NCBI GenBank assembly: GCA_002269645.1
Contig: NIVC01001599.1
Location: forward strand, 18,813 to 82,812
Origin: Macrostomum lignano
Lineage: Eukaryota
Direction: 5' to 3'
Length of the DNA stretch: 64,000 nucleotides
Positions 2,260 through 53,575 of this stretch are shown here, piece by piece; positions within the stretch are counted from its first letter, which is position 1, and the number at the start of each line of letters is the position of its first letter. The notes beneath the pieces were generated by a model, which did no database searches, was not told where the DNA came from, and saw nothing but the letters and a program-made list of their open reading frames with translations. Made by a program: the position numbers and the translations under genes.

Positions 2260-4495
2260 CACCATTTTACCCTCGCTTTTGAGCAGGCTCCGTTTCACTT
2301 TGGACAGTCGGAACTTCAGTTTAGAAACTTTTAGACTGGAGCCCCGAATCTACATTCACTATCGACAAACTCCGTTTCAGTATCGACAGCTAAGCTTTGT
2401 GCTGCTACACTTCTATCTATTTACATAGGCAAGTACGGAAACGCACATCCAGATCTAGGCGAAACTCCCTTTCACTTTCGACAAACGCCACTTCTCCTTA
2501 AACAGTCTATGGTCTAAGCTGCTGAAACTCCGTTTCACTTTAGTCAACCAACATTCAAGATAGACAAGGTACATTCACTTTAGACATGAACTCACACGGG
2601 AGGTGTGTAAAGGTTTATTAAGCATGTTCATGGAAATTTCCAAGGTTTAAAACTTTCATTGTAACAGAAGATGGCGTGCATGGAGGATTTTTTATCAATA
2701 AACAGTTAGCTTGGCTGCCTAATTTAAAAGGCATTTGAGAATTCAGGACTTCCGAAAAATGTTTGTTTAACAGCGTCGTGATTAAAACGGCAAAGCCAAC
2801 AGAAGCGAAGCGATAGTTCAGCGATGGGTTCTGATTTCCATTAGCCATCAATTGGCTGAGACGCCAAGCACCGTGGCAGATACCTGAAGCAATGGCTGAG
2901 CCACCGTGCCACCTTCTCTGGAGTGATGCAGTCGGCGGTGCCGTCCACCTCACGAGCTGCTGCTCGGTCGGCCTGATGAAGGAATCTTGGATCGCCGACA
3001 GTCGACGCTTCAGAGCCGCCTTCCAGCATGATATCGCGTTCTCAACTGGGGTGAGAAATGGGCTGTAGGGTGGCAGTCGTCTCACTTCCACAGCGTCTTC
3101 GACCTCGTAGCTTTCGGTGTCATTGTGGCTGCTGACGTTGTCTATGACAACACTGATGCTGCTGTCCGGAAACACGCTGTGGAAGTTGGCGATTGTGATT
3201 GTGAGAAACTCGCCGAATCTCTCCTTTGTCATGCCGCTGTCGTATGACTGGAAGTGCACGATTCCAGCAGCCGGGCTTACTACCAGGCAGACGGTGATGC
3301 GCTGTCCCTTCTGTCCAGAAACCTGTTGGTACACGCGCTGTCCACGAAGAGATCGTCCATAGGATCGCCGCATCCATGTGTTGAAGCCAAACTCGTCAAT
3401 AAAGATCTTCTCTGTGTCAGATGCTTCGGGCGAGCACATCCACTGAGCAAATTGCTCACGAGCGGCTACAACCCTTGGCGAGTTGCGCTCAGCTGGAAGA
3501 TCTCGTGCCAGCTTCGTTGTGAACAGTGCACCGTCGAGTTTTATGCTCAGTGTCTTTTCTGAGACATGCTGCTTCTCAGGAAAAGCTTGTCTGAGCATGG
3601 TGTTCATCTCTTTCAGAGTCAGCAATGGATTCTGCTCCACGATTGCGCACAAATATTCTTGCATCTCACCATCCCACTTCACGTTCTTGGCTCCGCCGCA
3701 CGAAAGCTTCTCCACTCGTCCACTCCTCACAATGGAATATGCGGTCGTTCTCTTGATGCCAAGTTGAGAGGCCAGTAGGATAAAATCTTCGCCCTTCTGG
3801 TAAGCGGAGAGAAGTCGCTGCCTGTCATGGTTGCTCACTGGCTGTCGCTGTTGCGCTGGAGCCTGCTCTTCAAAGTTGCTTTCACTTTCGTCTTCGTAAC
3901 CAGGCTCCTCTTCTAGGTACGAATCTTCACTGTCCTCCATATTTTTCAGGGCTTGCTTTAGCGAATATATTTAGCGAATAGGCTTCAGTGTTTGGAGCGA
4001 AGGGAGAGTAGGCTGAGACTTTGGTTCGGAAGTTCGGAAGGTCTGGCCGGCGACCCTGCCACCCCACACTGTTCAAAGGGGCGAAAAAGGTGTCTTAAAA
4101 GGTATCTATGGTCAAAACCCCTCTTTCAGCCAACACTTAGGCGTAAACAAATGACGCATCTAATAATCTGTCTAAAGTGAATGTATCTTGTCTATCTTGA
4201 ATGTTGGTTGACTAAAGGGAAACGGAGTTTCAGCAGCTTAGACCATAGACTGTTTAAGGAGAAGTGGCGTTTGTCGAAAGTGAAAGGGAGTTTCGCCTAG
4301 ATCTGGATGTGCGTTTCCGTACTTGCCTATGTAAATAGATAGAAGTGTAGCAGCACAAAGCTTAGCTGTCGATACTGAAACGGAGTTTGTCGATAGTGAA
4401 TGTAGATTCGGGGCTCCAGTCTAAAAGTGTCTAAACTGAAGTTCCGACTGTCTAAAGTGAAACGGAATTTGTTCGGGGGTGAGGGTAAAATGGTG
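2260..4495 (-). mobile_element. IS630/Tc1/mariner-superfamily DNA transposon, 2236 bp, with 327-bp TIRs and TA TSD
   Basis: TIRs 2260-2586 and 4169-4495 (terminus CACCATTTTACCCTC; about 4 mismatches plus one divergent 14-bp patch); TA at 2258-2259 and 4496-4497; internal DDE transposase. Confidence 0.93.
2841..3940 (-). pseudogene. IS630-like DDE transposase, frameshifted near 2950
   Basis: Motifs IFIDEFGFN, VIDNVSSH and LPPYSPFLTPVE; the family-like C-terminus (ITPEKVARWLSHCFRYLPRCLASQPIDG, stop 2841-2843) is in a different frame. Confidence 0.88.
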
Positions 4496-5048: not shown

Positions 5049-5549
5049 ATGCCGCTGCTTCAGCAAGACGCATCGGAGAGTCCTGCCGCGGACCTGCTGA
5101 CCGCCATTGCCGCCGTGCGGGTGAGCTCGGTGCTGAACAGGAACAACTCCGAGTTCGGCAAGCGGCACCTCACCGATCGCAATCCCGAGACCTGCTGGAA
5201 CTCCGATCAGGGCGCCGGGCAGTGGATTGAGCTGGCCCTGGCCCGGCCCTCCCGGCTGCTCAGCCTGCAGCTGCAGTTTCAGGGCGGCTTCTCCGCCACC
5301 CGCTGCCTGGTGGCCGCTCTTCCAGGCGATGGCGAGCCTCAACTGCTGGCGGACGCCCGCCTCTCCGACTCCAGCCAGTTGCAGTCGCTGAACTTGGCGC
5401 CGGGCGCGCCGCCCGTGCGCGACCGGATTCGACTCACTTTCTTAGAAACTGCCGATCCTTTTGGCCGGGTGACAGTCTACCAGCTGGGGGCACCGTGCTC
5501 CCGTGCTGACTCACACGCCTTAGCTAATGATCCCAAATCCCTTAGCTAA
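5049..5549 (+). CDS. NR2C2AP: Nuclear receptor 2C2-associated protein (TRA16) homolog, intronless
   Basis: VRVSSVLNRN..FGKRHL...ETCWNSDQG...QFQGGFS...DPFGRVTVYQL matches the family motifs; ATG at 5049; the stop lies inside the downstream minisatellite. Confidence 0.9.
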   Translation: MPLLQQDASESPAADLLTAIAAVRVSSVLNRNNSEFGKRHLTDRNPETCWNSDQGAGQWIELALARPSRLLSLQLQFQGGFSATRCLVAALPGDGEPQLLADARLSDSSQLQSLNLAPGAPPVRDRIRLTFLETADPFGRVTVYQLGAPCSRADSHALANDPKSLS

Positions 5550-6737
5550 TGATCCCAAACCCCTTAGCTAATGATCCCAAACCCCTTAGCTAATGATCCC
5601 AAATCCCTTAGCTAATGATCCCAAATCCCTTAGCTAATGATCCCAAATCCCTTAGCTAAGCATCCCAAATCCCTTAGCTAATGATCCCAAATCCCTTTGC
5701 TAAGCATCCCAAATCCCTTAGCTAAGCATCCCAAATCCCTTAGCTAATGATCCCAAATCCCTTAGCTAAGCATCCCAAATCCCTTAGCTAAGCATCCCAA
5801 ATCCCTTAGCAAAACATCCCAAATCTCTTAGCAAAGCATCCCAAATCCCTTAGCTAAGCATCCCAAATCCCTTAGCTAATGATCCCAAATCCCTTAGCTA
5901 AGCATCCCAAATCCCTTAGCTAAGCATCCCAAATCCCTTAGCAAAACATCCCAAATCTCTTAGCAAAGCATCCCAAATCCCTTAGCTAAGCATCCCAAAT
6001 CCCTTAGCTAATGATCCCAAATCCCTTAGCTAAGCATCCCAAATCCCTTAGCTAAGCATCCCAAATCCCTTAGCTAATGATCCCAAATCCCTTAGCAAAG
6101 CATCCCAAATCCCTTAGCAAAGCATCCCAAATCCCTTAGCTAATGATCCCAAATCCCTTAGCTAAGCATCCCAAATCCCTTAGCTAAGCATCCCAAATCC
6201 CTTAGCAAAGCATCCCAAATCCCTTAGCAAAGCATCCCAAATCCCTTAGCTAATGATCCCAAATCCCTTAGCTAAGCATCCCAAATCCCTTAGCTAAGCA
6301 TCCCATATCCCTTAGCAAAGCATCCCAAATCCCTTAGCTAATGATCCCAAATCCCTTAGCTAAGCATCCCAAATCCCTTAGCTAAGCATCCCAAATCCCT
6401 TAGCAAAGCATCCCAAATCCCTTAGCAAAGCATCCCAAATCCCTTAGCTAATTATCCCAAATCCCTTAGCTAAGCATCCCAAATCCCTTAGCTAAGCATC
6501 CCATATCCCTTAGCAAAGCATCCCAAATCCCTTAGCTAAGCATCCCAAATCCCATAGCAAAGCATCCCAAATCCCTTAGCTAATGATCCCAAATCCCTTA
6601 GCTAAGCATCCCAAATCCCTTAGCTAAGCATCCCAAATCCCTTAGCTAAGCATCCCAAATCCCTTAGCTAAGCATCCCAAATCCCTTAGCAAAGCATCCC
6701 AAATCCCTTAGCTAAGCATCCCAAATCCCTTAGCTGA
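5519..6737. repeat. 22-bp minisatellite (CTTAGCTAATGATCCCAAATCC / ..CTAAGCATCCC..), about 55 copies
   Basis: 22-bp period seen directly. Confidence 0.95.
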
Positions 6738-6958
6738 GCATGGTGACACTTTAGTTCCTTGGCACCAGTTGCCAGCAGTTGAAATGCGAAGTCTTTTGTC
6801 AAGTAGTTATGTACGCCTGTGCCATGAAATATATTTTATGAATTTTATCATTGGAGCGAGGTATTCATGCCTCGCTGTATTTTACAGACATGTATCATCA
6901 CTGTACTGAGCGTAAAATGAACGAAATCACCACGTATTTTTACGTTATCTCAATGAGT

Positions 6959-7315: not shown

Positions 7316-7352
7316 AATGAGTTAGGGAATGAGGATACGCTTGAGTCTGAAA

Positions 7353-9095
7353 ATTGGATTGGATGGGGTCAGGCAATTGGGTTGGATGGGGTCAGGCAAT
7401 TGGATTGGATGGGTCAGGCAATTGGGTTGGATGGGGTCAAGCAATTGGGTTGGATGGGGTCAGGCAATTGGATTGAATGTGGTCAGGCAATTGGATTGGA
7501 TGGGGTCAGGCAATTGGATTGAATGTGGTCAGGCAATTGGATTGGATGGGGTCAGGCAATTGGGTTGGATGGGGTCAAGCAATTTGGCTGGATGGGGTCA
7601 GGCAATTTGGCAGGATGGGGTCAGGCAATTGGGTTTGATGGGGTCAGGCAATTGGATTGGATGGGGTCAGGCAATTGGGTTGGATGGGGTCAGGCAATTG
7701 GATTGAATGTGGTCAGGCAATTGGATTGGATGGGGTCAGGCAATTTGGCTGGATGGGGTCAGGCAATTTGGCTGGATGGGGTCAGGCAATTTGGCTGGAT
7801 GGGGTCAGGCAATTGGGTTGGATGGGGTCAGGCAATTGGATTGGATGGGGTCAGGCAATTGGATTGGATGGGGTCAGGCAATTGGGTTGGATGGGGTCAG
7901 GCAATTGGATTGAATGTTGTCAGGCAATTGGATTGGATGGGGTCAGGCAATTGGATTGAATGTGGTCAGGCAATTGGATTGGATGGGGTCAGGCAATTGG
8001 ATTGGATGGGTCAGGCAATTGGGTTGGATGGGGTCAAGCAATTGGGTTGGATGGGGTCAGGCAATTGGGTTGGATGGGGTCAAGCAATTGGGTTGGATGG
8101 GGTCAGGCAATTGGGTTGGATGGGGTCAGGCAATTGGATTGGATGTGGTCAGGCAATTGGATTGAATGTGGTCAGGCAATTGGGTTGGATGGGGTCAGGC
8201 AATTTGGCTGGATGGGGTCAGGCAATTTGGCTGGATGGGGTCAGGCAATTGGGTTGGATGGGGTCAAGCAATTGGATTGGATGGGGTCAGGCAATTGGGT
8301 TGGATGGGGTCAGGCAATTTGGCTGAATGGGGTCAGGCAATTTGGCTGGATGGGGTCAGGCAATTTGGCTGGATGGGGTCAGGCAATTGGATTGGATGGG
8401 GTCAGGTTGGATGGGGTCAGGAAATTTGGCTGGATGGGGTCAGGCAATTTGGCTCGATGGGGTCAGGCAATTGGATTGGATGGGGTCAGGCAATTGGATT
8501 GGATGGGGTCAGGCAATTGGATTGAATGTTGTCAGGCAATTGGATTGGATGGGGTCAGGCAATTGGGTTGGATGGGGTCAGGCAATTTGGCTGGATGGGG
8601 TCAGGCAATTTGGCTGGATGGGGTCAGGCAATTGGGTTGGATGGGGTCAAGCAATTGGATTGGATGGGGTCAGGCAATTGGGTTGGATGGGGTCAGGCAA
8701 TTGGATTGAATGTGGTCAGGCAATTGGATTAGATGGGGTCAGGCAATTGGGTTGGATGGGGTCAGGCAATTTGGCTGGATGGGGTCAGGCAATTTGGCTG
8801 GATGGGGTCAGGCAATTTGGCTGGATGGGGTCAGGCAATTGGATTGGATGGGGTCAGGTTGGATGGGGTCAGGAAATTTGGCTCGATGGGGTCAGGCAAT
8901 TGGATTGGATGGGGTCAGGCAATTGGATTGGATGGGGTCAGGCAATTGGATTGAATGTGGTCAGGCAATTGGATTGGATGGGGTCAAGCAATTGGGTTGG
9001 ATGGGGTCAGGCAATTGGATTGAATGTGGTCAGGCAATTGGATTGAATGTGGTCAGGCAATTGGGTTGGATGGGGTCAGGCAATAGGATTGAATG
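7353..9095. repeat. 23-bp minisatellite (GGATTGGATGGGGTCAGGCAATT), about 75 copies
   Basis: 23-bp period seen directly. Confidence 0.95.
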
Positions 9096-9478
9096 GTGTC
9101 CTTAAACTCCCGATTCAAAGGTTGTTAATTAATTTTCTCAGATGTATATTTCACTGTGACGAGCCGGCACATCTGGATATATGCGCTATATACAGTATAT
9201 CTTATTATTACTATAATATAGGTATTCATTACTTGCGCAGTAAAATGATATGGTGACTACTGTAATGCTAGATGCATTGCTTCGTTTATCTTATTACAAA
9301 AACAAATTGTCTTCAACAATTGCCAACAGAAAGTTTTTTATCTAATCTCCCTATTGCACAAGCGCGTGCATAAATATCGTTTTATAGCGTCCGTCTGCCT
9401 GTCCGTCTGCCTGTCCGTCTGTCTGCCTGTCCGTCTGTCTGCCTGTCCGTCTGTCTTCCTGTCCGTCTGTCTGCGTCG

Positions 9479-11979: not shown

Positions 11980-14900
11980 TAATATATGTTGTTGTATTGC
12001 TATTTTGTGTCGAAAAATATACGTCTGTTTAAAAATGCAATTGCATTTTTATGTTTACGTCAACTACATGTAAATGTGTATGCCAGTGTGCACATTTTTA
12101 ATTCCCAAGTCGATCATACTTGTATTTTTTGAGCCAACAAAGCCTAAAAAATTCTTCAAAGTTTTCCTAACTATTGTACAGCACCGCATATGCAGTAGAC
12201 ATATGATACATCTACCATGACTGTCAATGTCTGTCAATCCAACCTTATATACATGCTTGTACATGTGCCAAATTGTATTTTTTTAATGTTACATGTAGCA
12301 CTATAGCTTAGCTACCGATTCATCTTCACCCAGCACAACTCCTGGGGAAGAGGTCGGCTTCTTGTTCTAAAGTGACCTTCATTTTTATTATATTTTTTGC
12401 GCTCTCAAAAGTCCGACTTACTGGAACTCTAAAAAGACCATTGCGTGAGCCCGCATGCGCCTTTCAGCAGTTTAAACAAAAATTCACAGTTCTCATTTAT
12501 ATGAGTGATAAAATCAACGTAAATCCATAAAATATCTTGTAAAAGTTACAATTTATTACTTTGCTTTGGGTAAAAATGTGAATTTAATATTTTCATATTC
12601 ATGGGGAATTTTTAACTTAAGGAGACGATGCCAATTTTTAGATCCTTGTTAACTGTTGTTCAACTACATATCCGTGTGCCAATTATTTCAAAGGCTGTAT
12701 AAATTCTTTAACGGCTAAATGCTGAATCAATAAATCAAAGTAATTTGAACCTTATAGTATAACACTTTATGCCAACCTCATCTCATCTGAATCGTCTACT
12801 GATTTATTTAAATTCAATTTATTCAGTTGTCATCACCTTACCTAAAGTAAAGACCAATTTTCTAGCCTCCTAGCTCCAAAGCATAAAGCAAGCACAAAGT
12901 AGTTAGCTACTTTGCTAATTAAGCTATATTTAATCCAGGCTTTCTATATTGAAAACTTGAAAATGCATTAAGTATGGATGATGTAGGCCTGATTTTTTAA
13001 GTAAAATTTAGAAGCCTGATGGCGATGCTTTAAAGCAGAAGTTATGAGTATGATTTTTGTTTGTTGCATTATCCTTCTGAATAATTTTCAGACAGTCACT
13101 TTAAAATTATTGAAAAAGCTATTGCTAATCTAGTAAGCCTATTGTAATTTTTAAACTAGAATTTCATCAACATGTATACTATATTATATATATAGTGATC
13201 ATCCCATTTGGCATTAATACTGAATATTATTTGTTAGTATCTCATAATCTTTTACTATACTCCATTGCCATTTTATAGACTATAAAATCTAATATGAAAA
13301 AATAAATTTATAAGTTGCAATTTTGTAATAATAAAATATATTAAAATGAAATAATAGATAAAATAAAAAGTTTCAGTAAGGCATAACTGCCATTGAGTTT
13401 CACTACTACAAATTTTTTTTTCTTTGACCTAATCTATATCCAATCCATAGGTGTACCTAGATTTTTCTTATAATAGTCTGACTACTATGAATATCCATAG
13501 TTAATTAATATCCCTAGGCTATAACCTATAACTTGATATCAATAATTGAACTTATTACTTATTAATAATGTCTCATTTAATTACCTTAATATATAAGAAG
13601 AATGTCTAAACTTGTATTGTTTGAACACCTGACCCTAGGGACTTTAGAGTTCCCTTCTTAAAAGCTACTGGCAAAATTTATTCATTTCTATTGCTTTACC
13701 ACCGTCTGCCGAAGTGGCCACCATGTTGCTACTATTGCGCGTTCAGGGACGCCAACACGCACAGCCACTTTGCTAGCACTTTCATCACTGCACTTGGTGG
13801 CAAGCGTGGAGGTGCTTAGTACGCGGAGGTATGCACTGCAGTTTGAGCCACCGCGGAACAAGCAGTCCTGCTAATGCGACCAGCCTAGAGAGAGCAGCCG
13901 GTATGGCGAGCCGACCCCGCAATTTGGCAAGCGAGGGAAGAGCTGGAGAGACACCGTTTGAGCAGGCGACCAACACGCGAGGCAGAGGAGGCTCTGCTGC
14001 TGGGCCCGATACCAGAGGCCGCGTGGCCTGGTCGGCTATCAATGCTCTGACAGGGCGAAAGCGGCGCATTCCGCTAAACCTGGCAGGCGACTCTGCGGAC
14101 GAGCGCAGGAACGAGCTGCGTGAGTTCTTCGACGCCGTTGTCAACGCGCCGCCACCCCCGCTGCCAGACAGTCTGACGCTGCCGCCGGAGATGTCGTTGC
14201 CGGCAAAGGAGAGCTTCAGCCTAGCACCAGTCAGCACAGCCGACGTTGTGAGGTTCGCCCAACAGTCACCGGGCGGGAAAGCGCTGGGTCCGGACGAGGT
14301 GCCCATCGAGGCGCTGCGCATCCACTGTGTGGCCAGTGGGGTCGCCAGCGTGATGAACTGCGTGCTTTTCGGTGAGGCGGCACCCAACGAATGGACCACG
14401 GCGCACATCGTCGCAGTTCCAAAGAAGCCGGGCACCACGAGGCTTGAGGAGCACCAAGGCATCTGTCTGCAGTCCTGTGCTGCGAAGTTGTTCAACCGGT
14501 TGCTGTTATCGCGGTTGCAGCCCGTGCTGGATCCGTACCTGCGTCCTGAGCAGAACGGCTTCCGGCCCCATCGCGGCACAGTGACGCAGATCCTGGCTCT
14601 TCGGCGAGTCATCGAGAAAGCACGGATACGTCAGTCGATCCTGATTGTTATCTTTATAGATTTCAAGAAGGCATTCGACTCGGTCGTCAGGTCTGTGCTC
14701 CCAAAGGTGCTCCGTGCGTACAACGTGCCAGAGCAGCTGATTTCCGCCATCATGGCGATGTACCGTGATACGAAAGCTGCTGTTTCAACACCAGACGGCC
14801 TATCGGACTTCTTTGAGACATTTTCCGGGGTGCTTCAGGGAGATACGCTTGCGCCGTTCCTGTTCGTTCTGGTGCTTGACTGGGTGCTGCGGACCGCTCT

Positions 14901-15569
14901 TCCTACCAACGATGACGGCTTTCTGTTACGGCGACGCGTCGGTCGACGTCAACCGGAGAGGCGGCTCAGCGTGCTTGGCTACGCCGACGACCTCGCCTTG
15001 CTGTCCTCAACTGTCGAGGGCGCCCAGCGACAACTGGACAAGCTAGATGATGTTGCGGCGAGTGTCGGCCTGGTGGTCAACACGCAGAAGACCATCGTGC
15101 TCTGCGTGCCAGACGACATCGAGGCAGCGATTTTGTGCCGAGGCGCTGATGGACAGGCGACAGAGCTTCCGCGTTGTCAGCAGTTCGTCTACCTCGGCAA
15201 TCTAGTTCCCGGTGTCCGCGAGGATTTGCGGCGTCGCCGCGGGCTCGCCTGGGCTGCCTTTCGTTCTGTGAGGGCAGCCCTGCAGTCCGAGGCCTTACCT
15301 GACCGCCAGAGGGCGGCGTTGTTCCAGGCGGTGATCGATACCGTCCTGCTGTACAACGCCGAGTCGCTGACGGAGTCGCTCGAGCAGCAAGTTGACGCGG
15401 CGCACGCTGGCCTGCTGCGCGCCGCCTTCAAAATCGGCGACAAGCGAGTGACCAACGCGGCTTTGTATCGCCGCGCCGGCCTGGTCCGTCCAAGCGACCT
15501 GCTGCGCCGTCGGCGACTCCAGCTGGCAGGCCACATCATCCGTGCCGAGTCGAACTGCCCAGAGCCGGT

Positions 15570-15956
15570 TCTTCTTCATTCTTCTTCTTCATCTTCGGGT
15601 CACGGACATTGTAGCTAGACGATGTAGCTAATAGGACCGGGTGCCTAGCACCATGCAGTCGGGGCGCTGACTCCGCGTGGGCGGACAGTAGATGGTAAAA
15701 TCCAATTTGCGGCCTGCGGCGGGTGGCCAGAAAGCAAGGGAACCCGAGTCCCGGTGCGCAGGGCTCCTCCGCAGACCGACTTACGCTGTAAAAAGCGCCA
15801 CCCACCGCCAACCTAATGGTGAGGGACAGCTCCAGGCTGCATACCCGGAGGTGAGACCAATTCGTCACCCCGTCGATGGCAGGGACGGACGGAGCTCCTG
15901 CCACATTGGCGGGGTGTCCAGGGGCGCGACGTGGATGCTGGTCTCGTGCCACCCCC
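15570..15956 (-). mobile_element. 387-bp non-autonomous retroelement nested antisense in the LINE
   Basis: TSD AGAGCCGGT (15561-15569 and 15957-15965); (GAA)n-type tail on the minus strand at about 15570-15595; no ORF of note. Confidence 0.88.
15853..15956 (-). ncRNA. HDV-like self-cleaving ribozyme (nested double pseudoknot)
   Basis: P1 GGGGGU/GCCCCU, P2 GAGACCA/UGGUCUC, P3 GCA/CGC (one mismatch), L3 UCCACGU, P1.1 CC/GG, P4 CACCCCG/CGGGGUG, J4/2 ACGAAU with catalytic-type C at 15864; G1 coincides with the 5' end of the element. Confidence 0.85.
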
Positions 15957-16399
15957 AGAGCCGGTGCAGGTGCTGCTGCTGACGCTGCAGGCACCCTACC
16001 GGCGGGGACAGGAGCGCGCCCTGTGACGCTAACCTGCGTATTCTATTGTTGTTGTTGTTGTTGTATTGCTTTACCCTTCAAGCATAAAATCAATGGCTCT
16101 AATAGTCTTTTAGTGGCCAATAATATTAAACACAGGAACTGTATATCTTCTTGCAACTTTCCATAGCCATACCTGCTGCTATGGTAGAGTCAAATATATT
16201 ATCAAATAATTATACTCTTTAAATACGAATAATAGGCCTATATCAGTTCTCTAAATTAAAACTGCAATTAGCTATGGAGTTATATCATTATGCTTAGATT
16301 TTATTTTTGTATAAAAATGTGTCATCTATAAGCAGACAAAGCCATTATTGGGCCTGACAGATTCTATTGAAAATAATACAATGATTTCAGCCAACAGTC

Positions 16400-18283: not shown

Positions 18284-20398
18284 GCGCCTATAACGCACTG
18301 AGAATCGCCCATAACACACTGAACATCGCCATAACACACTGAGAATCGTTCATAACAGATAATCGCCCATAGGCCATAACACACTGAGAATCGTTCATAA
18401 CACACAGATATAATCGCCCATAGGCCATAGCACACTGAGAATCGTTCATAACACACAGATAATCGCCCATAGGCCATAGCACACTGAGAATCGTTCATAA
18501 CACACAGATAATCGCCCATAGGCCATAGCACACTGAGAATCGTTCATAACACACAGATAATCGCCCATAGGCCATAACACACTGAGAATCGTTCATAACA
18601 CACAGATAATCGCCCATAGGCCATAGCACACTGAGAATCGTTCATAACACACAGATAATCGCCCATAGGCCATAGCACACTGAGAATCGTTCATAACACA
18701 CAGATAATCGCCCATAGGCCATAACACACTGAGAATCGTTCATAACACACAGATAATCGCCCATAGGCCATAGCACACTGAGAATCGTTCATAACACACA
18801 GATAATCGCCCATAGGCCATAACACACTGAGAATCGTTCATAACACACAGATAATCGCCCATAGGCCATAGCACACTGAGAATCGTTCATAACACACAGA
18901 TAATCGCCCATAGGCCATAGCACACTGAGAATCGTTCATAACACACAGATATCGCCCATAGGCCATAACACACTGAGAATCGTTCATAACACACAGATAA
19001 TCGCCCATAGGCCATAGCACACTGAGAATCGTTCATAACACACAGATAATCGCCCATAGGCCATAACACACTGAGAATCGTTCATAACACACAGATAATC
19101 GCCCATAGGCCATAACACACTGAGAATCGTTCATAACACACAGATAATCGCCCATAGGCCATAGCACACTGAGAATCGTTCATAACACACAGATAATCGC
19201 CCATAGGCCATAGCACACTGAGAATCGTTCATAACACACAGATAATCGCCCATAGGCCATAACACACTGAGAATCGTTCATAACACACAGATAATCGCCC
19301 ATAGACCATAACACACTGAGAATCGTTCATAACACACAGATAATCGCCCATAGGCCATAGCACACTGAGAATCGTTCATAACACACAGATAATCGCCCAT
19401 AGGCCATAACACACTGAGAATCGTTCATAACACACAGATAATCGCCCATAGGCCATAGCACACTGAGAATCGTTCATAACACACAGATAATCGCCCATAG
19501 GCCATAACACACTGAGAATCGTTCATAACACACAGATAATCGCCCATAGGCCATAACACACTGAGAATCGTTCATAACACAGATAATCGCCCATAGGCCA
19601 TAACACACTGAGAATCGTTCATAACACAGATAATCGCCTATAGGCCATAACACACTGAGAATCGTCCATAACACACTGAGAATCGTCCATAACACACAGA
19701 TAATCGCCCATAGGCCATAACACACTGAGAATCGTTCATAACACACAGATAATCGCCCATAGGCCATAGCACACTGAGAATCGTTCATAACACACAGATA
19801 ATCGCCCATAGGCCATAACACACTGAGAATCGTTCATAACACACAGATAATCGCCCATAGGCCATAACACACTGAGAATCGTTCATAACACACAGATAAT
19901 CGCCCATAGGCCATAACACACTGAGAATCGTTCATAACACAGATAATCGCCCATAACACACATATATAATCGCCCATAGGCCATAGCACACTGAGAATCG
20001 TTCATAACACACAGATAATCGCCCATAGGCCATAACACACTGAGAATCGTTCATAACAGATAATCGCCCATAGGCCATAACACACTGAGAATCGTTCATA
20101 ACACACAGATAATCGCCCATAGGCCATAACACACTGAGAATCGTTCATAACACACAGATAATCGCCCATAGGCCATAACACACTGAGAATCGTTCATAAC
20201 ACAGATAATCGCCCATAGGCCATAACACACTGAGAATCGTTCATAACACAGATAATCGCCTATAGGCCATAACACACGGAGAATCGTTCATAACACAGAT
20301 AATCGCCCATAGGCCATAACACACTGAGAATCGTTCATAACACAGATAATCGCCTATAGGCCATAACACACGGAGAATCGTCCATAACACACAGATAA
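18284..20398. repeat. 49-bp minisatellite, about 43 copies
   Basis: Unit CACACTGAGAATCGTTCATAACACACAGATAATCGCCCATAGGCCATAA; 49-bp period seen directly. Confidence 0.95.
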
Positions 20399-20861
20399 TG
20401 ACAATTTTGACGACCCGAGAATTGATTATCCATTAATTCGATTTGCGGAAGCCAAAATTTCAATTTTTTTCCAGTGCTAATTTTCAGTTAAAAATATTTG
20501 TAATAATTATTTGTGCAGTTGCTACCGTGCTCCATAAATGCAGATATCAAAACGATTTGATTTTTTTCCTGTAAAGTGTTTTTTTCTAATGCTATTTAGT
20601 ATTCACCCATCATTTAAAATGACGACCCTGTGATGGAGCCGCAGGCTTTGATCAAGTATTATCTAGAACATTTCATTTCCTAGCTTTTCATTCCAGTTAC
20701 AAGTTAAATCAGCTTGTCACCCATTAAATATAATATATTTGAAATCTGTATCCAAGATACCTGCATTAAACCGGAAAATATTTTATTTAATTCAATAGTA
20801 GCTTGCAAACTATCTTTGCTGATTTTCAGTACATGTACACTGCCCTAACAACTGCCAAGGC

Positions 20862-27419: not shown

Positions 27420-29435
27420 TCAGTCGCACTCGTCGCCGAACGCAGCCAGGAACTGCACCAGGGTGTCGGCAGGCAGCGGCACCAGCGCAGAGTCGCCGGC
27501 CTGGCCGCGGCCGTCGAATTTCAGCCTGACGAGGCCGTGGTCGCGGAACTCGCGGAGGTGAGCCTGCAGAGTGAGCTCGGAGGTGACCAACATGCCGTCC
27601 CGGCAGGCCGTGTAAACCTCATCCAGCGGCCAGGGCTCACCGGGCCGCTCCAGCTGCCGCCTGGCCAGCATGACGAACAGCGACCTGGCGTTCTGCGTCA
27701 GCGAGGCCATGAGGTGCCGCAGGCTGGACAGCTGCAGCGCGACCGACACTTCGCCGCCGATGCCAACGGCGCCAGAACCGGCGCCGGCGGTTGTCGACTC
27801 GACGGCCCGGCCGGTGTAGGCGGCGCTGGCAGGCAATTCCTCGATATAGGGGCGCAGCGGCTTGGGCAACTGGCACCACAGGCAGGCCATGCTGGTGAGC
27901 TGGCCGCGGTCCCACAGCAACTGGCACAGCCGGTGATCCAGACTGGCGATCATTCGGACAGTCGGTGATGAGACCAGCGCCGTGATGGCCTCCGCGGCTT
28001 TGTCCGTGCGCAGCTGCGGCCCGTCAAGGCTGTGGAACTGAGGGCGGCGTATTGGGACTGGACTATGGGGATCTGAGAGATTTGGGAATCCAGTATGGGG
28101 ATCTGGGAGATTTGGGAATTCAGTATGGGGATCTGAGAGATTTGGGAAGACAGAATGGGATCTAGGAGATTTGGGAATGCAGTATGGGATCTGAGAGGTT
28201 TGGGAATTCAGTATGGGGATCTGAGAGATTTGGGAATGCAGTATGGGGATCTGGGAGATTCGGGAATTCAGTATGGGGATCTGAGAGATTTGGGAATGCA
28301 GTATGGGGATCTGGGAGATTCGGGAATTCAGTATGGGGATCTGAGAGATTTGGGAATGCAGTATGGGGATCTGAGAGATTTGGGAATTCAGTATGGGGAT
28401 CTGAGAGATTTGGGAATGCAGTATGGGGATCTGGGAGATTCGGGAATTCAGTATGGGGATCTGAGAGATTTGGGAATGCAGTATGGGGATCTGGGAGATT
28501 CGGGAATTCAGTATGGGGATCTGAGAGATTTGGGAATGCAGTATGGGGATCTGAGAGATTTGGGAATTCAGTATGGGGATCTGAGAGATTTGGGAATTCA
28601 GTATGGGGATCTGAGAGATTTGGGAATGCAGTATGGGGATCTGAGAGATTTGGGAATTCAGTATGGGATCTGGGAGATTTGGGAATGCAGTATGGGGATC
28701 TGAGAGATTTGGGAATTCAGTATGGGGATCTGGGAGATTTGGGAATCCAGTATAGGGATCTAGATTAAAGACCCGAGATCATGAGGGGTTGGTAGGTTGG
28801 GATTAAGCCTGAGGGTTCAAGTTTGTGAGGTTGACAGAGCTGAGGTCAACCAGTCTCACCACAATGTACAGAGTGAGGCCGACAGTCTCCAGAGTAGAAG
28901 CAATCAGCCTGGCCATGTCAGGCAGCGACTTGGCAGAGCTGGGCGTCACCTCGCCGATCAGTTCCTCAACAAGCGCCGTCAGGATGGCCTTGGGACCGGC
29001 CTCGGGATGGAAGCCGTCAATCTCGGCGCAGAGCTGATCGCCGAGGCAGGCAGACTTGAACTGGCGCAGCAGGTGCCGCTTGGACCCCAGGCCATACACT
29101 AGCAGGCTGAATCCGCCCACGCGAAGGCGGCGCGACCAGTCAGCAAAGTAGATCCGGGCGCACTCGGCCTCGGCTGCGGTTGGCGAGCTGGCCGCAGCTT
29201 CGGTGGCTTCGATGTACTCTTCGGCCAGGCGCAGCGAAGTCTCCTCGTCCGGCCGGTTGGCCAGGGAGGCGAGCGTGGCTGGGCGGGATCTACTTGCCGA
29301 TTTATTCTTGTTATTCTTGTACTTTTTATTATTATAATTCGACTTTAACCTGGGCGCCGATGCGGCATTGAAATATCGATCAGTTTCTTCGGCAGCTTGG
29401 CGAATTGCATCATCTCGGTTGGCTTCTAGGGGCAT
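27420..29435 (-). CDS. ORC2: Origin recognition complex subunit 2, 397 aa; exons 29435-28860 and 28037-27420
   Basis: GFSLLVYGLGSKRHLL, IDGFHP, FHSLDG..LR, IASLDH..LLWD, LSSLRHLMASLTQNAR, LVTSELTLQAHLREFRDHGLV; phase-0 GT-AG intron. Confidence 0.93.
28055..28765. repeat. 30-bp minisatellite filling the ORC2 intron
   Basis: Unit CAGTATGGGGATCTGAGAGATTTGGGAAT(T/G). Confidence 0.95.
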
Positions 29436-30302
29436 TTTGATTGGCTGCGGGTGTATGGTTAGGTTGGAGCTGTGTAGCATTGGGGAGATAACTTACGAGT
29501 ATAAGGCTCAAACAGAACTCAGAACTATAATAGGCCTCTATTTTAATTTTACAGGTTATAAATTTCTATGCTGCAGGACTCTTAGTACTACTACGAGTAT
29601 AATTTTTACTATTTTTAGTACAACTACGTAGTATACTGTGAATAGTATTACTATTATTATTAGTATCCCTAAGCTGCATCACTTAACTCCTATCTTTTAT
29701 TATGGTATATCTTGTATATGTGGATTTTATTCTTAAAATATATGCTTCTCTCTCTATTTAATTGTTAATATATTCTTTTAGCATACATGCACAACACCTG
29801 GCTAAGCTGGCCTAGATAAGTGGATAGCCAAGACAGATATGTTGCAAAACTGATTAACTAAAAACAAAAATGGTACAGATAGTACATAGGACAAAAAGAA
29901 TAAATGGGATTAATATATAAAGTGAGAAAAAACATGGAAAATGAAAAATGGGTCTAAAAACTATCATTCCAATGGTACAATGATGACAATTTTCTATATC
30001 TATAGATTAAGATAAGATACTCCCGATTTGGCTTATCTAATATATTTCTAAGCTTTATAACTTTGTATATTAATATTATATATAATAATATATATACATA
30101 TATAAATGTAGATTATTATGTATTCAATGTTTTGTTTTTTGAATTATTAAAAAAATACTCATATATTGATTTTAAGTTCGCCCTGGCTTATATGATCATA
30201 TAAAAAAAGCTTATTTATTGTAACAGGTAGTATTCTGTGTCTTGTCGATAACAAAGAATTGAACTTGAAGCACAGCATTCCTGGACCAAGGCTACTGCTG
30301 TC

Positions 30303-37745: not shown

Positions 37746-37794
37746 TTTTAATTCTGATTATGATACTTTTTCTGGGAATGTTAACTTGCTTTCC

Positions 37795-40015
37795 TTTCCC
37801 TCACTTCCGGTCATTCTAGCTAGCTTCCCTTTCCCTCACTTCCGGTCATTCTAGCTAGCTTCCCTTTCCCTCACTTCCGGTCATTCTAGCTAGCTTCCCT
37901 CTCCGTCACTTCCGGTCATTCTAGCTAGCTTCCCTTTCCCTCACTTCCGGTCATTCTAGCTAGCTTCCCTTTCCAGTTTCCCTCACTTCCGGTCATTCTA
38001 GCTAGCTTCCCTTTCCCTCACTTCCGGTCATTCTAGCTAGCTTCCCTCTCCGTCACTTCCGGTCATTCTAGCTAGCTTCCCTTTCCGTCACTTCCGGTCA
38101 TTCTAGCTAGCTTCCCTTTCCCTCACTTCCGGTCATTCTAGCTAGCTTCCCTTTCCCTCACTTCCGGTCATTCTAGCTAGCTTCCCTTTCCGTCACTTCC
38201 GGTCATTCTAGCTAGCTTCCCTTTCCCTCACTTCCGGTCATTCTAGCTAGCTTCCCTTTCCCTCACTTCCGGTCATTCTAGCTAGCTTCCCTTTCCCTCC
38301 CTGTCATTCTAGCTAGCTTCCCTTTCCCTCACTTCCGGTCATTCTAGCTAGCTTCCCTTTCCCTCACTTCCGGTCATTCTAGCTAGCTTCCCTCTCCGTC
38401 ACTTCTGGTCATTCTAGCTAGCTTCCCTTTCCCTCACTTCCGGTCATTCTAGCTAGCTTCCCTTTCCCTCACTTCCGGTCATTCTAGCTAGCTTCCCTTT
38501 CCCTCACTTCCGGTCATTCTAGCTAGCTTCCCTTTCCCTCCCTGTCATTCTAGCTAGCTTCCCTTTCCCTCACTTCCGGTCATTCTAGCTAGCTTCCCTC
38601 TCCGTCACTTCCGGTCATTCTAGCTAGCTTCCCTTTCCGTCACTTCCGGTCATTCTAGCTAGCTTCCCTTTCCCTCACTTCCGGTCATTCTAGCTAGCTT
38701 CCCTTTCCCTCACTTCCGGTCATTCTAGCTAGCTTCCCTTTCCGTCACTTCCGGTCATTCTAGCTAGCTTCCCTTTCCCTCACTTCCGGTCATTCTAGCT
38801 AGCTTCCCTTTCCCTCACTTCCGGTCATTCTAGCTAGCTTCCCTTTCCCTCCCTGTCATTCTAGCTAGCTTCCCTTTCCCTCACTTCCGGTCATTCTAGC
38901 TAGCTTCCCTTTCCCTCACTTCCGGTCATTCTAGCTAGCTTCCCTCTCCGTCACTTCTGGTCATTCTAGCTAGCTTCCCTTTCCCTCACTTCCGGTCATT
39001 CTAGCTAGCTTCCCTTTCCCTCACTTCCGGTCATTCTAGCTAGCTTCCCTTTCCCTCACTTCCGGTCATTCTAGCTAGCTTCCCTTTCCCTCACTTCCGG
39101 TCATTCTAGCTAGCTTCCCTTTCCCTCACTTCCGGTCATTCTAGCTAGCTTCCCTTTCCCTCCCTGTCATTCTAGCTAGCTTCCCTTTCCCTCACTTCCG
39201 GTCATTCTAGCTAGCTTCCCTTTCCCTCACTTCCGGTCATTCTAGCTAGCTTCCCTTTCCAGTTTCCCTCACTTCCGGTCATTCTAGCTAGCTTCCCTTT
39301 CCCTCACTTCCGGTCATTCTAGCTAGCTTCCCTCTCCGTCACTTCCGGTCATTCTAGCTAGCTTCCCTTTCCGTCACTTCCGGTCATTCTAGCTAGCTTC
39401 CCTTTCCCTCACTTCCGGTCATTCTAGCTAGCTTCCCTTTCCCTCACTTCCGGTCATTCTAGCTAGCTTCCCTTTCCGTCACTTCCGGTCATTCTAGCTA
39501 GCTTCCCTTTCCCTCACTTCCGGTCATTCTAGCTAGCTTCCCTTTCCCTCACTTCCGGTCATTCTAGCTAGCTTCCCTTTCCCTCCCTGTCATTCTAGCT
39601 AGCTTCCCTTTCCCTCACTTCCGGTCATTCTAGCTAGCTTCCCTTTCCCTCACTTCCGGTCATTCTAGCTAGCTTCCCTCTCCGTCACTTCCAGTCATTC
39701 TAGCTAGCTTCCCTTTCCGTCACTTCCGGTCATTCTAGCTTGCTTCCCTTTCCCTCACTTCCGGTCATTCTAGCTAGCTTCCCTTTCCCTCCCTGTCATT
39801 CTAGCTAGCTTTCCTTTCCCTCACTTCCGGTCATTCTAGCTAGCTTCCCTTTCCCTCGCTTCCGGCCATTCTAACTAGCTTCCCTTTCCCTCACTTCCGG
39901 TCATTCTAGCTAGCTTCCCTTTCCCTCACTTCCGGTCATTCTAGCTAGCTTCCCTTTCCCTCACTTCTGGTCATTCTTGCTAGCTTCCCTTTCCCTCACT
40001 TCAGTCAATTTTGCT
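37795..40015. repeat. 35-bp minisatellite (CTTCCGGTCATTCTAGCTAGCTTCCCTTTCCCTCA), about 60 copies
   Basis: 35-bp period seen directly. Confidence 0.95.
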
Positions 40016-41088
40016 AGCCTCCCTTTACCTCACTTAACTTAATTCTTGGTACACCTATTTTGCATTCTATAATGATATGGTTAATAAATTCATTTTTGCA
40101 AAAATTAATACATACATAATTAGAAATAATCAATGTATGTCATATAGCAACCCATTTTTAATGAATTTTTGTTTCTTTATTTATTCGGATATAATGAAAT
40201 TTCTAGAAAGCCTTAATATTCAGACTAGGCCCATCTGATTTTTATATAATCTTATCTACTATACTTGTTTACTAAAGGTATGTTGCAAAATTGACCCCTT
40301 CAGAAAGGTATAAAAGGGCAAAAAAAGTAATATTGAAAGAGGAAAGAAGAGATCATATATTCCCAAACCTTATTAATTTATGCTAGCTATGCAACTTTGT
40401 TTCAACAAAGATGTACTTTCTTTGTTATTGCATTTTTCTCCTTCTGTTGTCCCTTTTTTCTGTTTTCTTTCCAACTCCATTATAAACCAAGTTTTTATCT
40501 AGAGGGTATGATGTCATATCTAGAATTAGGGTATAATTTTGAAGTTTTAAATAATAACTTGCACAAAAAACTTAATCATTTTTAAGAGGCAGTTTTGAAA
40601 TTTTGGGTGTTTTACATGTCTGTTTGCAGAGACCTTGGCTAAAAAAACTTTGAAAGAAATTAATGTAGTTAATAAAACTTATTTATGCTGGCATTTTCAT
40701 ATAAAGTCAAAGTGTAAATGGGTTATGATACAAATTCTCTTATTTAGTATAATATGCCATTAGCAAAATTGAATAAGTATTATTACTTCTTTTTATAATT
40801 TTACTAGAAGTCTAGCGGGTATAGATAAAATCCACTGAACTATGTGCTGACATGACCTTTTCTGCTTGTAACTATTCTTAAGCCTTTCATCTATATCATA
40901 GTTGATGTAGTTAGTGTACATGTACATGTATGACAGACAGTTGCTATAACCTGGCTTGGCATTAGTTTTATGATGCTGGGTACCTAAATTATGAAAGTTT
41001 TCTAATTGCTACAGATGGCTAGAAGTTCGTCTGCGTGGTCAGTAGTTTAGCCTAGTCCAATTTCCCCCACTGCAGCCAATTTTGCATC

Positions 41089-52139: not shown

Positions 52140-53575
52140 GTGCTTCAATGGCGCCCTTAATGACCCCCTGAGCTTCAATGGCGCCCCCAATAACCGTCGG
52201 CGCTTCACTGGCGCCCCAATGACCCTCGGCGCTTAAATGTCGCCCCAATGACCCTCGGCACTTCAATGACGCCCCCAATGATCCTCGGCGGTTCAATGGC
52301 GCCCCAATGACCCTCGGGGCTTCACTGGCGCTCTCTATGACCCTCGGCGGTTCAATGGCGCTCCTAATGACCCCCCGAGCTTCACCGGCGCCCCCAATGA
52401 CCCCCCGAGCTTCACTGGCGCCCTCAATGACCCCCGAGCTTCACTGGCGCCCCCAATGACCCCCGAGCTTCACTGGCGCCCCCAATGACATCCCGAGCTT
52501 CACTGGGCCACCAATGACCCTCGGCGCTTCAATGGCGCCCCAATGACTCTCGGCGCTTCAATGGCGCCCCCAATGACCCTCGAAGCTTAGATGGCGCCCC
52601 CAATGACCCTCGGGGGCTTCACTGGCGCTCTCTACGACCCTCGGCGGTTCAATGGCGCTCTTAATGACCCCCCGAGCTTCACTGGCGCCCCCAATGACCC
52701 CCCGAGCTTCACTGGCGCCCCCAATGACCCTCGGCGCTTCAATGGCGCCCCAATGACCCTCGGCGCTTCACTGGCGCCCCCAATGACCCTCGGCACTTCA
52801 ATGGCGCCCCAATGACTCTCGGCACTTCAATGGCGCTCCCTATGACCCTCGGCGGTTCAATGGCGCCCCAATGACCCTCGGGGGCTTCACTGGCGCCCCC
52901 AATGACCCTCGGCACTTCAATGACGCCCCCAATGATCCTCGGCGGTTCAATGGCGCCCCAATGACCCTCGGGGCTTCACTGGCGCCCCCAATGACCCTCG
53001 GCACTTCAATGACGCCCCCAATGATCCTCGGCGGTTCAATGGCGCTTCTAATGACCCCCCGAGCTTCACCGGCGCCCCCAATGACCCCCCGAGCTTCACT
53101 GGCGCCCCCAATGACCCCCCGAGCTTCACTGGCGCCCTCAATGACCCCCGAGCTTCACTGGCGCCCCCAATGACCCCCGAGCTTCACTGGCGCCCCCAAT
53201 GACATCCCGAGCTTCACTGGGCCACCAATGACCCTCGGCGCTTCAATGGCGCCCCAATGACTCTCGGCGCTTCAATGGCGCCCCCAATGACCCTCGAAGC
53301 TTAGATGGCGCCCCCAATGACCCTCGGCGCTTCAATGACGCCCTCAATGACTCGATCGGCACTTCAATGGCGCCCCCAATGATCCTCGGAGCTTCAATGG
53401 CGCTCCCAATGACCCCCCGAGCTTCAATGGCGCCCCCAATGACCCCCCGAGCTTCACTGGCGCCCCAATGACCCCCGAACTTCAATGGCGTCCCCAATGA
53501 CCCCCGAGCTTCAATGGCGCCCCAATGACCCCCGAGCTTCACTGGCGCCCCCAATGACCCTCGGAGTTTCACTGG
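52140..53575. repeat. About 30-bp GC-rich minisatellite (GGCGCCCCCAATGACCC..GAGCTTCACT)
   Basis: Seen directly. Confidence 0.93.

What the first reader, a model, noticed from the sequence alone, without database searches (positions are those of the whole stretch)
15570..15956. Ribozyme-headed non-coding retroelement nested inside an RTE-like LINE
Seen: a 387-bp TSD-flanked antisense insert with a (GAA)n tail interrupts the RT ORF. Its first 104 nt (minus strand, 15956-15853) pair into all HDV-fold helices (P1, P1.1, P2, P3, P4), with L3 UCCACGU and J4/2 ACGAAU. The predicted cleavage G is the element's 5' boundary. The two imperfections (U in P1, A in P3) are both explainable as CpG transitions. 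Known: HDV-like ribozymes process the 5' ends of RTE, R2 and other non-LTR elements. Inference: this is a SINE-like family with no tRNA head, whose RNA is defined by self-cleavage and mobilised by an RTE-type RT. Whether the family is already described is unknown.
Basis: partly seen in the sequence, partly recalled or inferred. Interest (0 to 1): 0.85.

Follow-up and report, generated by a model that had tools for sequence, protein, structure and literature searches.

The report
Ribozyme-headed short retroposon inside a LINE
A 387-bp non-coding retroposon sits inside a LINE element of a probable Macrostomum flatworm genome, and its RNA begins with a convincing hepatitis-delta-virus-like self-cleaving ribozyme fold; this is a new example of a known design, in which a ribozyme sets the 5' end of a mobile RNA.

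Summary
Window 15956..15570 (minus strand) is a 387-bp insertion with a 9-12 bp target-site duplication and a (GAA)n-type tail. It interrupts the RT ORF of a 5'-truncated, (TTG)n-tailed RTE-like LINE (13701-16063). Four related LINE copies run uninterrupted through the site. The first 104 nt form every HDV-like helix: P1 with G1•U37, P1.1, P2, P3 and P4, with L3 UCCACGU and J4/2 ACGAAU (catalytic C at 15864). My structural descriptor hits only here in the window. It gave 0-1 hits per 3 Mb of random sequence and none in 318 kb of RTE loci. Rfam's HDV_ribozyme model is the best of 4227 families on this stretch, but at 21.4 bits it is below the 50-bit gathering score. The predicted cleavage site falls within the 3-nt uncertainty of the 5' junction.

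I found no second copy and no autonomous partner in any accessible collection. "Family" and "RTE-mobilised" therefore remain inference. None of the RTE relatives fetched has an HDV motif, a GAA tail or any similarity to the insert. The design is already known from R2 SIDEs, NARTc/SIDER and RTE/Baggins ribozymes. Verdict: real, most likely a short internally deleted (SIDE/SINE-like) element with an HDV-like head. It is a new member of a known kind and of moderate interest.

The parts
15570..15956 (-). Whole retroposed insert (387 bp): ribozyme head, non-coding body, 3' hairpin and (GAA)n-type tail
   Evidence: It is flanked by direct repeats, its removal restores the host ORF, and related LINEs have empty sites.
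15853..15956 (-). HDV-like ribozyme fold (element nt 1-104); predicted cleavage 5' of G15956
   Evidence: Pairs checked. It is the only descriptor hit in the window, against random controls. RF00094 is the best Rfam family at 21.4 bits.
15951..15956 (-). P1 5' strand GGGGGU. It pairs with 15920-15925 (GCCCCU), with G1•U37 at the cleavage site.
15920..15925 (-). P1 3' strand
15939..15945 (-). P2 5' strand GAGACCA. It pairs with 15853-15859 (UGGUCUC), 7 Watson-Crick pairs.
15853..15859 (-). P2 3' strand
15926..15938 (-). P3 (GCA/CGC, A21xC29 mismatch) enclosing L3 UCCACGU (15929-15935). C15934 and C15933 pair with G15918 and G15919 to form P1.1.
   Evidence: The L3 matches the HDV consensus at U-C-C-x-C-G in the Rfam alignment.
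15918..15919 (-). P1.1 3' strand (GG)
15866..15916 (-). P4, a long bipartite hairpin (7 + 7 bp)
15860..15865 (-). J4/2 ACGAAU; the putative catalytic cytosine is C15864
   Evidence: It aligns to GGCuAAu of RF00094.
15597..15852 (-). Non-coding body with no detectable relative
15612..15630 (-). 3' hairpin UAGCUA-CAUCGUC-UAGCUA, 15 nt upstream of the tail. It is a candidate RT recognition element (inference).
   Evidence: present in both the MFE and the centroid structure
15570..15596 (-). (GAA)n-type tail GAAGATGAAGAAGAAGAATGAAGAAGA
   Evidence: the only such run in the window
15957..15965 (-). Target-site duplication, 5' copy ACCGGCTCT. It extends to 12 bp if GGG at 15954-15956 is counted.
15561..15569 (-). 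Target-site duplication, 3' copy ACCGGCTCT, followed by GGG at 15558-15560
13701..16063 (+). Host: a 5'-truncated RTE-like LINE (RT ORF, (TTG)n tail) with its own 11-12 bp TSD at 13689-13700 and 16064-16075

Best explanation
The insert is a copy of a short, non-coding, non-autonomous non-LTR retroposon. It is of the SIDE/SINE-like kind but has no pol III head.

Proposed mechanism:
1. The element is transcribed as part of a longer read-through transcript.
2. The HDV-like ribozyme formed by its first 104 nt cuts immediately 5' of G1. This removes all upstream host sequence and defines the RNA's 5' end.
3. The RT/endonuclease of an autonomous LINE, not yet identified, recognises the 3' hairpin and the (GAA)n tail.
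4. That enzyme copies the RNA into a nicked target by target-primed reverse transcription. This produces the 9-12 bp duplication.
5. The 5' junction is sealed at a GGG microhomology.

Shown here: the retroposition hallmarks, the empty sites, the complete HDV-like pairing scheme with the conserved L3 and J4/2 nucleotides, and its coincidence with the 5' junction.

Inferred: catalytic activity, read-through transcription, the identity of the helper LINE, and the existence of further copies. This copy lies antisense in a dead LINE and carries a P3 mismatch, so it is probably inert itself.
For: - Retroposition is shown by the TSD, the tail, ORF restoration and four empty paralogous sites.
- All five helices, G1•U37, L3 U..CC..G and J4/2 CGAA are present.
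- The descriptor hits only here in the window. It gave 0 and 1 hits in 3 Mb each of random sequence and 0 hits in 318 kb of LINE loci.
- RF00094 is the best of 4227 Rfam families, aligned end to end and starting at 15956.
- There is no tRNA, 7SL or 5S head and no coding signal.
- The TSD length (9-12 bp) and a short-repeat tail resemble those of the neighbouring RTE-like LINEs: TSD 11-12 bp, tails (TTG)n, (ATGTT)n and (TAATA)n.
- Literature: P1 of 6-7 bp, P2 of at least 5 bp, a tolerated P3 mismatch and microhomology at 5' junctions in R2 ribozymes (PMC3774820); ribozyme plus 3' end is enough for a non-autonomous element (PMC3414825).
Against: - Only one copy is known, so there is no covariation and no test of 5'-end uniformity.
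- The Rfam score (21.4 bits) is far below the gathering score of 50, and nothing was reported in the whole-window scans.
- My descriptor was written after I had seen the candidate.
- The 5' boundary is ambiguous by 3 nt.
- P3 has a mismatch next to L3, and P1 has only 6 pairs.
- No LINE was found with the same head, the same 3' end or a (GAA)n tail.
- The MFE z-score of the head alone is unremarkable (-0.82). Nested folding ignores P2 and P1.1.
Confidence: 0.6

Rival explanations
1. A one-off remnant. [quoted passage not shown] On this reading the 387 bp are not a propagating non-autonomous family.
For: No second copy was found anywhere. The element consists of a 5' head and a 3' end with an unassignable body, which is what an internal deletion leaves.
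Against: The deletion would have had to remove every recognisable codon of a roughly 3 kb ORF; no APE/RT remnant is detectable. The parent LINE was not found either. The accessible collections do not hold the source genome, so the absence of copies is weak evidence.
Confidence: 0.17
2. A retrocopy of the 3' cleavage product of a cellular transcript that carries an HDV-like ribozyme (of the CPEB3-intron kind), picked up once by a LINE reverse transcriptase.
For: Single copy. The body has no similarity to any LINE. The 5' end lies at the predicted cleavage site.
Against: A (GAA)n microsatellite tail with an adjacent hairpin is a LINE/SINE-type 3' end, not a polyadenylated mRNA end. No gene-like content was found.
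Confidence: 0.08
3. The HDV-like pairing is a chance feature of a GC-rich retroposon, and its 5' end was set in another way, such as a transcription start or 5' truncation.
For: The Rfam score is below gathering. The head's MFE is not unusual. The descriptor was post hoc. GC-rich sequence forms helices easily; there was one weak hit in 3 Mb of GC-rich random sequence.
Against: The expected number of chance descriptor hits in 128 kb is below about 0.05. The one hit has P2 and P4 well above the minimum, carries the conserved L3 U/CC/G and CGAA, and starts within 3 nt of the junction of the only such insert in the window. RF00094 alone gives about 4e-5 on this stretch.
Confidence: 0.05

Closest known systems
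R2 SIDEs and R2/R1 hybrid SIDEs of Drosophila (Eickbush & Eickbush 2012, PMC3414825)
   Same: Short non-coding elements built from a 5' HDV-like ribozyme joined to a LINE 3' end. The RNA 5' end is made by self-cleavage of a co-transcript, and the element is propagated by a helper's TPRT. The hybrid SIDEs show that the ribozyme and the 3' end can come from different LINEs.
   Different: R2/R1 SIDEs insert site-specifically in rDNA and are pol I co-transcripts. This insert sits in a random APE-type target with a 9-12 bp TSD, has a (GAA)n tail, and has no known parent.
NARTc/RIME/SIDER with the Pr77 HDV-like ribozyme of the L1Tc/ingi clade in trypanosomatids (PMC3185411, PMC3383444, PMC4035085)
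   Same: Dispersed, TSD-flanked non-autonomous derivatives of an APE-type LINE that keep an HDV-like ribozyme as their first ~77-100 nt.
   Different: They come from a different eukaryotic supergroup and LINE clade. Pr77 is also an internal promoter and the tails are poly(A). There is no sequence relation to this insert.
[quoted passage not shown] 2011, as summarised in the review PMC6765202)
   Same: An HDV-like ribozyme at the 5' terminus of promoter-less, randomly inserting non-LTR elements with short-repeat tails that are transcribed by read-through.
   Different: Those are autonomous LINEs and this one is non-coding. I could not read the primary paper, and the RTE-like LINEs sampled here show no HDV motif.
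Twister T-variants at the 5' end of Perere-3 (RTE) and hammerhead-bearing Sm-alpha SINEs in Schistosoma (PMC8501958, PMC6765202)
   Same: Flatworm non-LTR elements whose 5' end is set by a self-cleaving ribozyme adjacent to the TSD, with short-repeat tails (GTAA).
   Different: They use other ribozyme classes (twister, hammerhead). No paper in the searched library links HDV-like ribozymes to flatworms.
Hepatitis delta virus ribozyme, Rfam RF00094
   Same: It has the same helix order, G1•U37, P1.1 GG/CC, L3 UCCxCG and J4/2 CGAAU. RF00094 is the best-scoring Rfam family.
   Different: It scores 21.4 bits against a gathering score of 50. P4 is much longer, J1/2 is 5 nt and P1 has 6 pairs. The context is a genomic retroposon, not a viral RNA.

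Membership tests
HDV-like self-cleaving ribozymes | Five helices P1, P1.1, P2, P3 and P4 in the nested double-pseudoknot order (PMC3774820) | tested here: met
   All pairs are listed. It is the only descriptor hit in the window.
HDV-like self-cleaving ribozymes | Cleavage 5' of the first P1 nucleotide, with P1 of 6-7 bp closed by a G•U at the cleavage site and no upstream sequence needed | tested here: met
   G1•U37 and 6 bp. The P1 length range comes from PMC3774820. The G•U criterion is from my own knowledge of HDV structures.
HDV-like self-cleaving ribozymes | Catalytic cytosine in J4/2 and the conserved L3 G that forms a reverse wobble with an L3 U (PMC3774820) | tested here: met
   C93 (15864) lies in ACGAAU. 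L3 is U22-C-C-A-C-G27-U. Both align to the HDV consensus.
HDV-like self-cleaving ribozymes | Compensatory changes in the helices among homologues | tested here: inconclusive
   No homologue was retrievable, so there is no alignment to test.
HDV-like self-cleaving ribozymes | Self-cleavage activity that depends on the J4/2 cytosine | not testable with these tools
   This needs a co-transcriptional cleavage assay with a C15864U control.
Rfam RF00094 (HDV ribozyme proper) | Score at or above the curated gathering threshold (50 bits) | tested here: not met
   21.4 bits, and no hit in the whole-window scans. I therefore file it as HDV-like, not as RF00094.
Non-LTR (TPRT) retroposon insertion | Target-site duplication, a 3' simple-repeat or A-rich tail, and a precise empty site in paralogues | tested here: met
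   9-12 bp TSD and a (GAA)n tail. The ORF is restored on removal. Empty sites are seen in L001, L002, L085 and L088.
Classical SINE | A 5' head derived from a pol III gene (tRNA, 7SL, 5S) with an internal promoter | tested here: not met
   No tRNA and no Rfam match to tRNA, 7SL, 5S or snRNA.
SIDE / non-autonomous LINE derivative | No coding capacity | tested here: met
   No Pfam, RTE C-terminal-profile or database homology in any sense frame. The one antisense ORF of the insert that was tested has no homologue either.
SIDE / non-autonomous LINE derivative | 5' and/or 3' ends shared with an autonomous LINE | tested here: inconclusive
   There is no similarity to 8 close RTE-like copies or 80 distant RTE loci. 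The source genome itself could not be searched.
SIDE / non-autonomous LINE derivative | Multiple dispersed copies, each with its own TSD | tested here: inconclusive
   One copy in the 64-kb window and none in the public collections scanned. Those collections do not hold the source genome.
RTE-dependent element | A 3' end (tail repeat plus adjacent structure) matching an RTE-clade LINE | tested here: not met
   The sampled RTE relatives end in (TTG)n, (ATGTT)n, (TAATA)n or A/T-rich tails. None ends in (GAA)n and none matches the 3' end.

The most novel reading that the evidence does not exclude
This copy may be the first seen member of an undescribed, multi-copy family of promoter-less retroposons in macrostomid flatworms. 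The only functional modules of such a family would be an active HDV-like ribozyme head and a hairpin-plus-(GAA)n 3' end, mobilised by a LINE that does not itself carry the ribozyme (a hybrid, as in the R2/R1 SIDEs). That would add HDV-like ribozymes to the twister and hammerhead ribozymes already known in flatworm retroelements. It would also show ribozyme heads moving between LINE lineages.
Probability: 0.3. Interest if true: 0.55.

Novelty: new member of a known kind. Interest (0 to 1): 0.4.

Why it matters
It is a clean natural example of the minimal design for a mobile RNA. A self-cleaving ribozyme makes an exact 5' end from any host transcript, and a 3' end borrows a LINE's reverse transcriptase.

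If the family is multi-copy and its consensus cleaves, two things follow. HDV-like ribozymes would extend to free-living flatworms, where the searched literature reports only twister (RTE/Perere-3) and hammerhead (Sm-alpha) ribozymes. Each TSD-flanked copy would also record an in vivo cleavage event, giving a natural data set for ribozyme covariation.

It does not change current understanding. The principle has been established for R2, L1Tc/NARTc and RTE since 2010-2012.

Tried and rejected
1. Rfam over the whole window at gathering threshold, and over 701 nt at E<=10, gave no ribozyme hit. Only the 113-nt scan surfaced RF00094.

2. Other copies were sought in several ways, all with zero hits:
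- blastn of the insert against the window;
- CpG-degenerate patterns from the ribozyme core, J4/2-P2 and the 3' end against IMG/VR, JGI metagenomes and GTDB genomes;
- protein-space searches with the fully open sense frame and the antisense ATG ORF;
- an exhaustive phmmer search, whose only hit (P0121) is a tandem-repeat junk ORF.

3. The autonomous partner was sought among the full-length close relatives of the host LINE (L001, L002, L083-L087), the partial copy L088, and 80 RTE loci from metagenomes. None has an HDV motif, a GAA tail or similarity. A 20-nt match to the L086 3'-UTR hairpin (E 0.028) is treated as chance.

4. I tested whether the insert body is a remnant of an RTE C-terminus. 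Recurrent weak tblastn hits were not confirmed by a C-terminal profile or by Pfam.

5. Known ribozymes were not found at the 5' ends of the RTE relatives by Rfam.

6. Attempts to reach more of the source genome through exact-protein look-ups failed for the window's transposase and for a Macrostomum lignano protein.

7. The primary papers Ruminski 2011 and Webb 2009 are not held.

Full report
THE INSERT AND ITS HOST

On the minus strand, window 15956..15570 reads GGGGGTGGCACGAG...GAAGATGAAGAAGAAGAATGAAGAAGA. It is flanked by ACCGGCTCT at 15965-15957 and at 15569-15561. Both repeat copies are followed by GGG, which in the upstream copy is also the first three bases of the insert. The duplication is therefore 9-12 bp, and the element's first base lies somewhere in 15956-15953.

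The insert lies antisense in a plus-strand ORF with a Pfam RVT_1 domain. Deleting the 387 bp plus one repeat copy restores the frame...AESNCPEPV|QVLLLTLQAPYRRGQERAL*. Three full-length relatives (L001, L002, L085) and a copy that is 86% identical in DNA (L088) run uninterrupted through ...GAGCCGGT|xCAGG.... These are paralogous empty sites. The insertion is therefore a real retroposition event.

The host copy spans 13701-16063. It is 5'-truncated, ends in (TTG)n and has its own 11-12 bp duplication, (T)ATTGCTTTACC. Its closest named relatives are reverse transcriptases of the flatworm Macrostomum lignano at 67-88% identity. Full-length relatives are single-ORF APE+RT elements of 3.3-3.6 kb. 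This is consistent with the RTE clade, but I did not test it by phylogeny.

THE HDV-LIKE FOLD

I checked every pair:
- P1: G1-U6 with G32-U37, 6 pairs, including G1•U37 at the predicted cleavage site and a U6•G32 wobble.
- J1/2: 5 nt.
- P2: 12-18 with 98-104, seven Watson-Crick pairs.
- P3: G19-C31 and C20-G30, with an A21xC29 mismatch.
- L3: UCCACGU.
- P1.1: C23-G39 and C24-G38.
- P4: a long bipartite hairpin, 41-47/85-91 and 54-60/74-80.
- J4/2: ACGAAU, with C93 (window 15864) in the catalytic position.

These values lie inside the ranges reported for active R2 ribozymes: P1 of 6-7 bp, P2 of at least 5 bp, J1/4 of 0-2 nt and a variable P4. A P3 mismatch is tolerated in an active Nasonia ribozyme. 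The L3 G that forms a reverse wobble with an L3 U, and the catalytic C, are among the few conserved positions (PMC3774820).

IS THE FOLD MORE THAN CHANCE?

I encoded the canonical features in a descriptor: G1•U, P1 of 6-7 bp, P2 of at least 5 bp, P3 of 3 bp with at most one mismatch, an L3 of 6-8 nt containing CC, GG for P1.1, P4 of at least 4 bp, and C-N-AA before the P2 3' strand.
- It finds exactly one site in both strands of the window, 15956..15853.
- It finds none in 3 Mb of first-order Markov sequence of window composition.
- It finds one minimal hit in 3 Mb of sequence with the composition of the GC-rich LINE.
- It finds none in 318 kb of RTE-type loci.

The descriptor was written after I had seen the candidate, so these numbers are somewhat generous.

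There is independent support from Rfam. When only the 113-nt stretch is scanned, RF00094 (HDV_ribozyme) is the best of 4227 families. The alignment covers the whole model (1-89) and spans 15956-15852 at 21.4 bits, E 0.18. That is about 4e-5 for this single, pre-specified family. The score is well below the 50-bit gathering threshold, and the match was not reported in the larger scans. I therefore call it HDV-like, not a member of RF00094. The covariance-model alignment shifts P1 by two bases, but its cleavage site still falls inside the 3-nt junction ambiguity.

Nested MFE folding keeps P1 and P4 but has an unremarkable z-score of -0.82. That is expected, because nested folding ignores P2 and P1.1.

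That the only HDV-type motif in 128 kb starts within 3 nt of the 5' junction of the only (GAA)n-tailed insert is the strongest single argument.

THE REST OF THE ELEMENT

- There is no tRNA and no other Rfam family.
- One sense frame is open over all 128 codons. It has no ATG until near its end.
- That frame has no homologue in the word-indexed search or in Pfam. An exhaustive phmmer search of 1.84 billion representatives returned one hit, a tandem-repeat artefact.
- A profile of RTE C-termini finds nothing in the insert.
- A 6-bp hairpin, UAGCUA-CAUCGUC-UAGCUA (15630-15612), sits 15 nt upstream of the tail.

The element is therefore non-coding: ribozyme head, anonymous body, 3' hairpin and microsatellite tail.

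THE CpG ARGUMENT

T6 and A21 are indeed in TpG and CpA contexts. Old AT-rich DNA in the window is CpG-depleted (observed/expected 0.39-0.63), while the LINE and the insert are not (1.07 and 0.85). The explanation is possible. It cannot be tested without a family consensus, and U6•G32 needs no explanation.

FAMILY AND PARTNER

I found no second copy in any of the following:
- the window;
- IMG/VR;
- JGI metagenomes, which do hold an 86%-identical copy of the host LINE;
- GTDB genomes;
- protein space.

The source genome beyond the window could not be reached.

The full-length close RTE relatives carry (TTG)n, (ATGTT)n, (TAATA)n or A/T-rich tails. None of them, none of the 80 more distant RTE loci, and not the partial copy L088 has an HDV-type motif, a (GAA)n tail or similarity to the insert's head or 3' end.

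What does fit an RTE-type helper is indirect. The tail is a short tandem repeat that varies between families, and the TSD length is like the host's. The helper could equally be another APE-type LINE. The element could also be a hybrid, as in the R2/R1 SIDEs.

MOST LIKELY MECHANISM (confidence about 0.6)

1. The element is transcribed by read-through as part of a longer RNA.
2. The head self-cleaves 5' of G1 and discards the upstream sequence.
3. A helper LINE RT recognises the 3' hairpin and (GAA)n tail.
4. TPRT follows at a nicked target.
5. The 5' junction forms at a GGG microhomology, as described for R2 junctions (PMC3774820).

This copy lies antisense in a dead LINE and has a P3 mismatch, so it is probably inert.

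Rival explanations:
- A single full-length LINE copy later deleted in situ (0.17).
- A one-off retrocopy of a ribozyme-bearing cellular RNA (0.08).
- A chance fold (0.05).

COMPARISON WITH WHAT IS KNOWN

The design is established in several systems:
- NARTc, RIME and SIDER elements keep the HDV-like Pr77 of L1Tc/ingi (PMC4035085; PMC3383444).
- RTE and Baggins LINEs carry HDV-like ribozymes and depend on read-through transcription (review PMC6765202).
- In flatworms, the RTE element Perere-3 uses twister variants next to its TSD (PMC8501958), and Schistosoma SINEs use hammerheads.

The searched literature holds no paper linking HDV-like ribozymes to flatworms or any ribozyme work on Macrostomum.

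The finding is therefore a new member of a known kind. It is real and tidy but not surprising to a specialist, and I score interest at 0.4. The decisive test is a genome-wide copy census with 5'-end and covariation analysis, followed by a cleavage assay.

Noticed in passing
L001:30-120, L002:155-245, L085:100-190: Three full-length relatives of the host LINE share a 5' start, (A)AUGCCGC..CCUCC. Each has a perfect or near-perfect 8-10 bp hairpin of unrelated sequence directly upstream of it. This could be a covarying 5' structure, such as the P1 of an unrecognised 5' ribozyme like the twister variants of Perere-3, or a snap-back made at insertion. Rfam finds no known ribozyme there.
   Followed up: partly
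window 13689-13700 and 16064-16075: The host LINE copy (13701-16063) is 5'-truncated and has its own 11-12 bp target-site duplication, (T)ATTGCTTTACC, after a (TTG)n tail. The locus records two nested retroposition events.
   Followed up: yes
L001, L002, L083-L088 3' ends: Closely related RTE-like LINEs (54-85% protein identity) end in different short tandem repeats: (TTG)n, (ATGTT)n, (TAATA)n or A/T-rich. Tail repeats change quickly within this clade.
   Followed up: partly
whole window, e.g. 155-1843, 5518-6741, 7352-9100, 18328-20399, 37788-40035, 52142-53577: A large share of the 64 kb consists of dozens of unrelated minisatellite arrays with 15-50 bp units, each 0.3-2.2 kb long.
   Followed up: no
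window 2618-3940 (-): An intact 440-aa ORF has a DDE_3 transposase domain and an HTH_32 domain. It is probably a DNA-transposon copy. The exact protein is not on record elsewhere.
   Followed up: partly
window 28803-29480 (-): An ORF matches the Pfam ORC2 RecA-like domain (E 1e-15). It is probably an exon of the host's ORC2 gene.
   Followed up: no
window 15572-15955 (-): One sense frame of the insert is open over its whole length (128 codons, first ATG near the end). About 2% of frames of this composition would be open by chance (my estimate). No homologue exists.
   Followed up: yes
window 15781-15800 (-) vs L086:3910-3929: A 20-nt match (90% identity, E 0.028 in a 25-kb database) links a small hairpin in the insert body (GCGCUUUUUACAGCGUAA) to the hairpin that immediately follows the stop codon of one RTE relative. 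It is probably chance, but it is the only hint of an RTE-type 3' motif in the insert.
   Followed up: no
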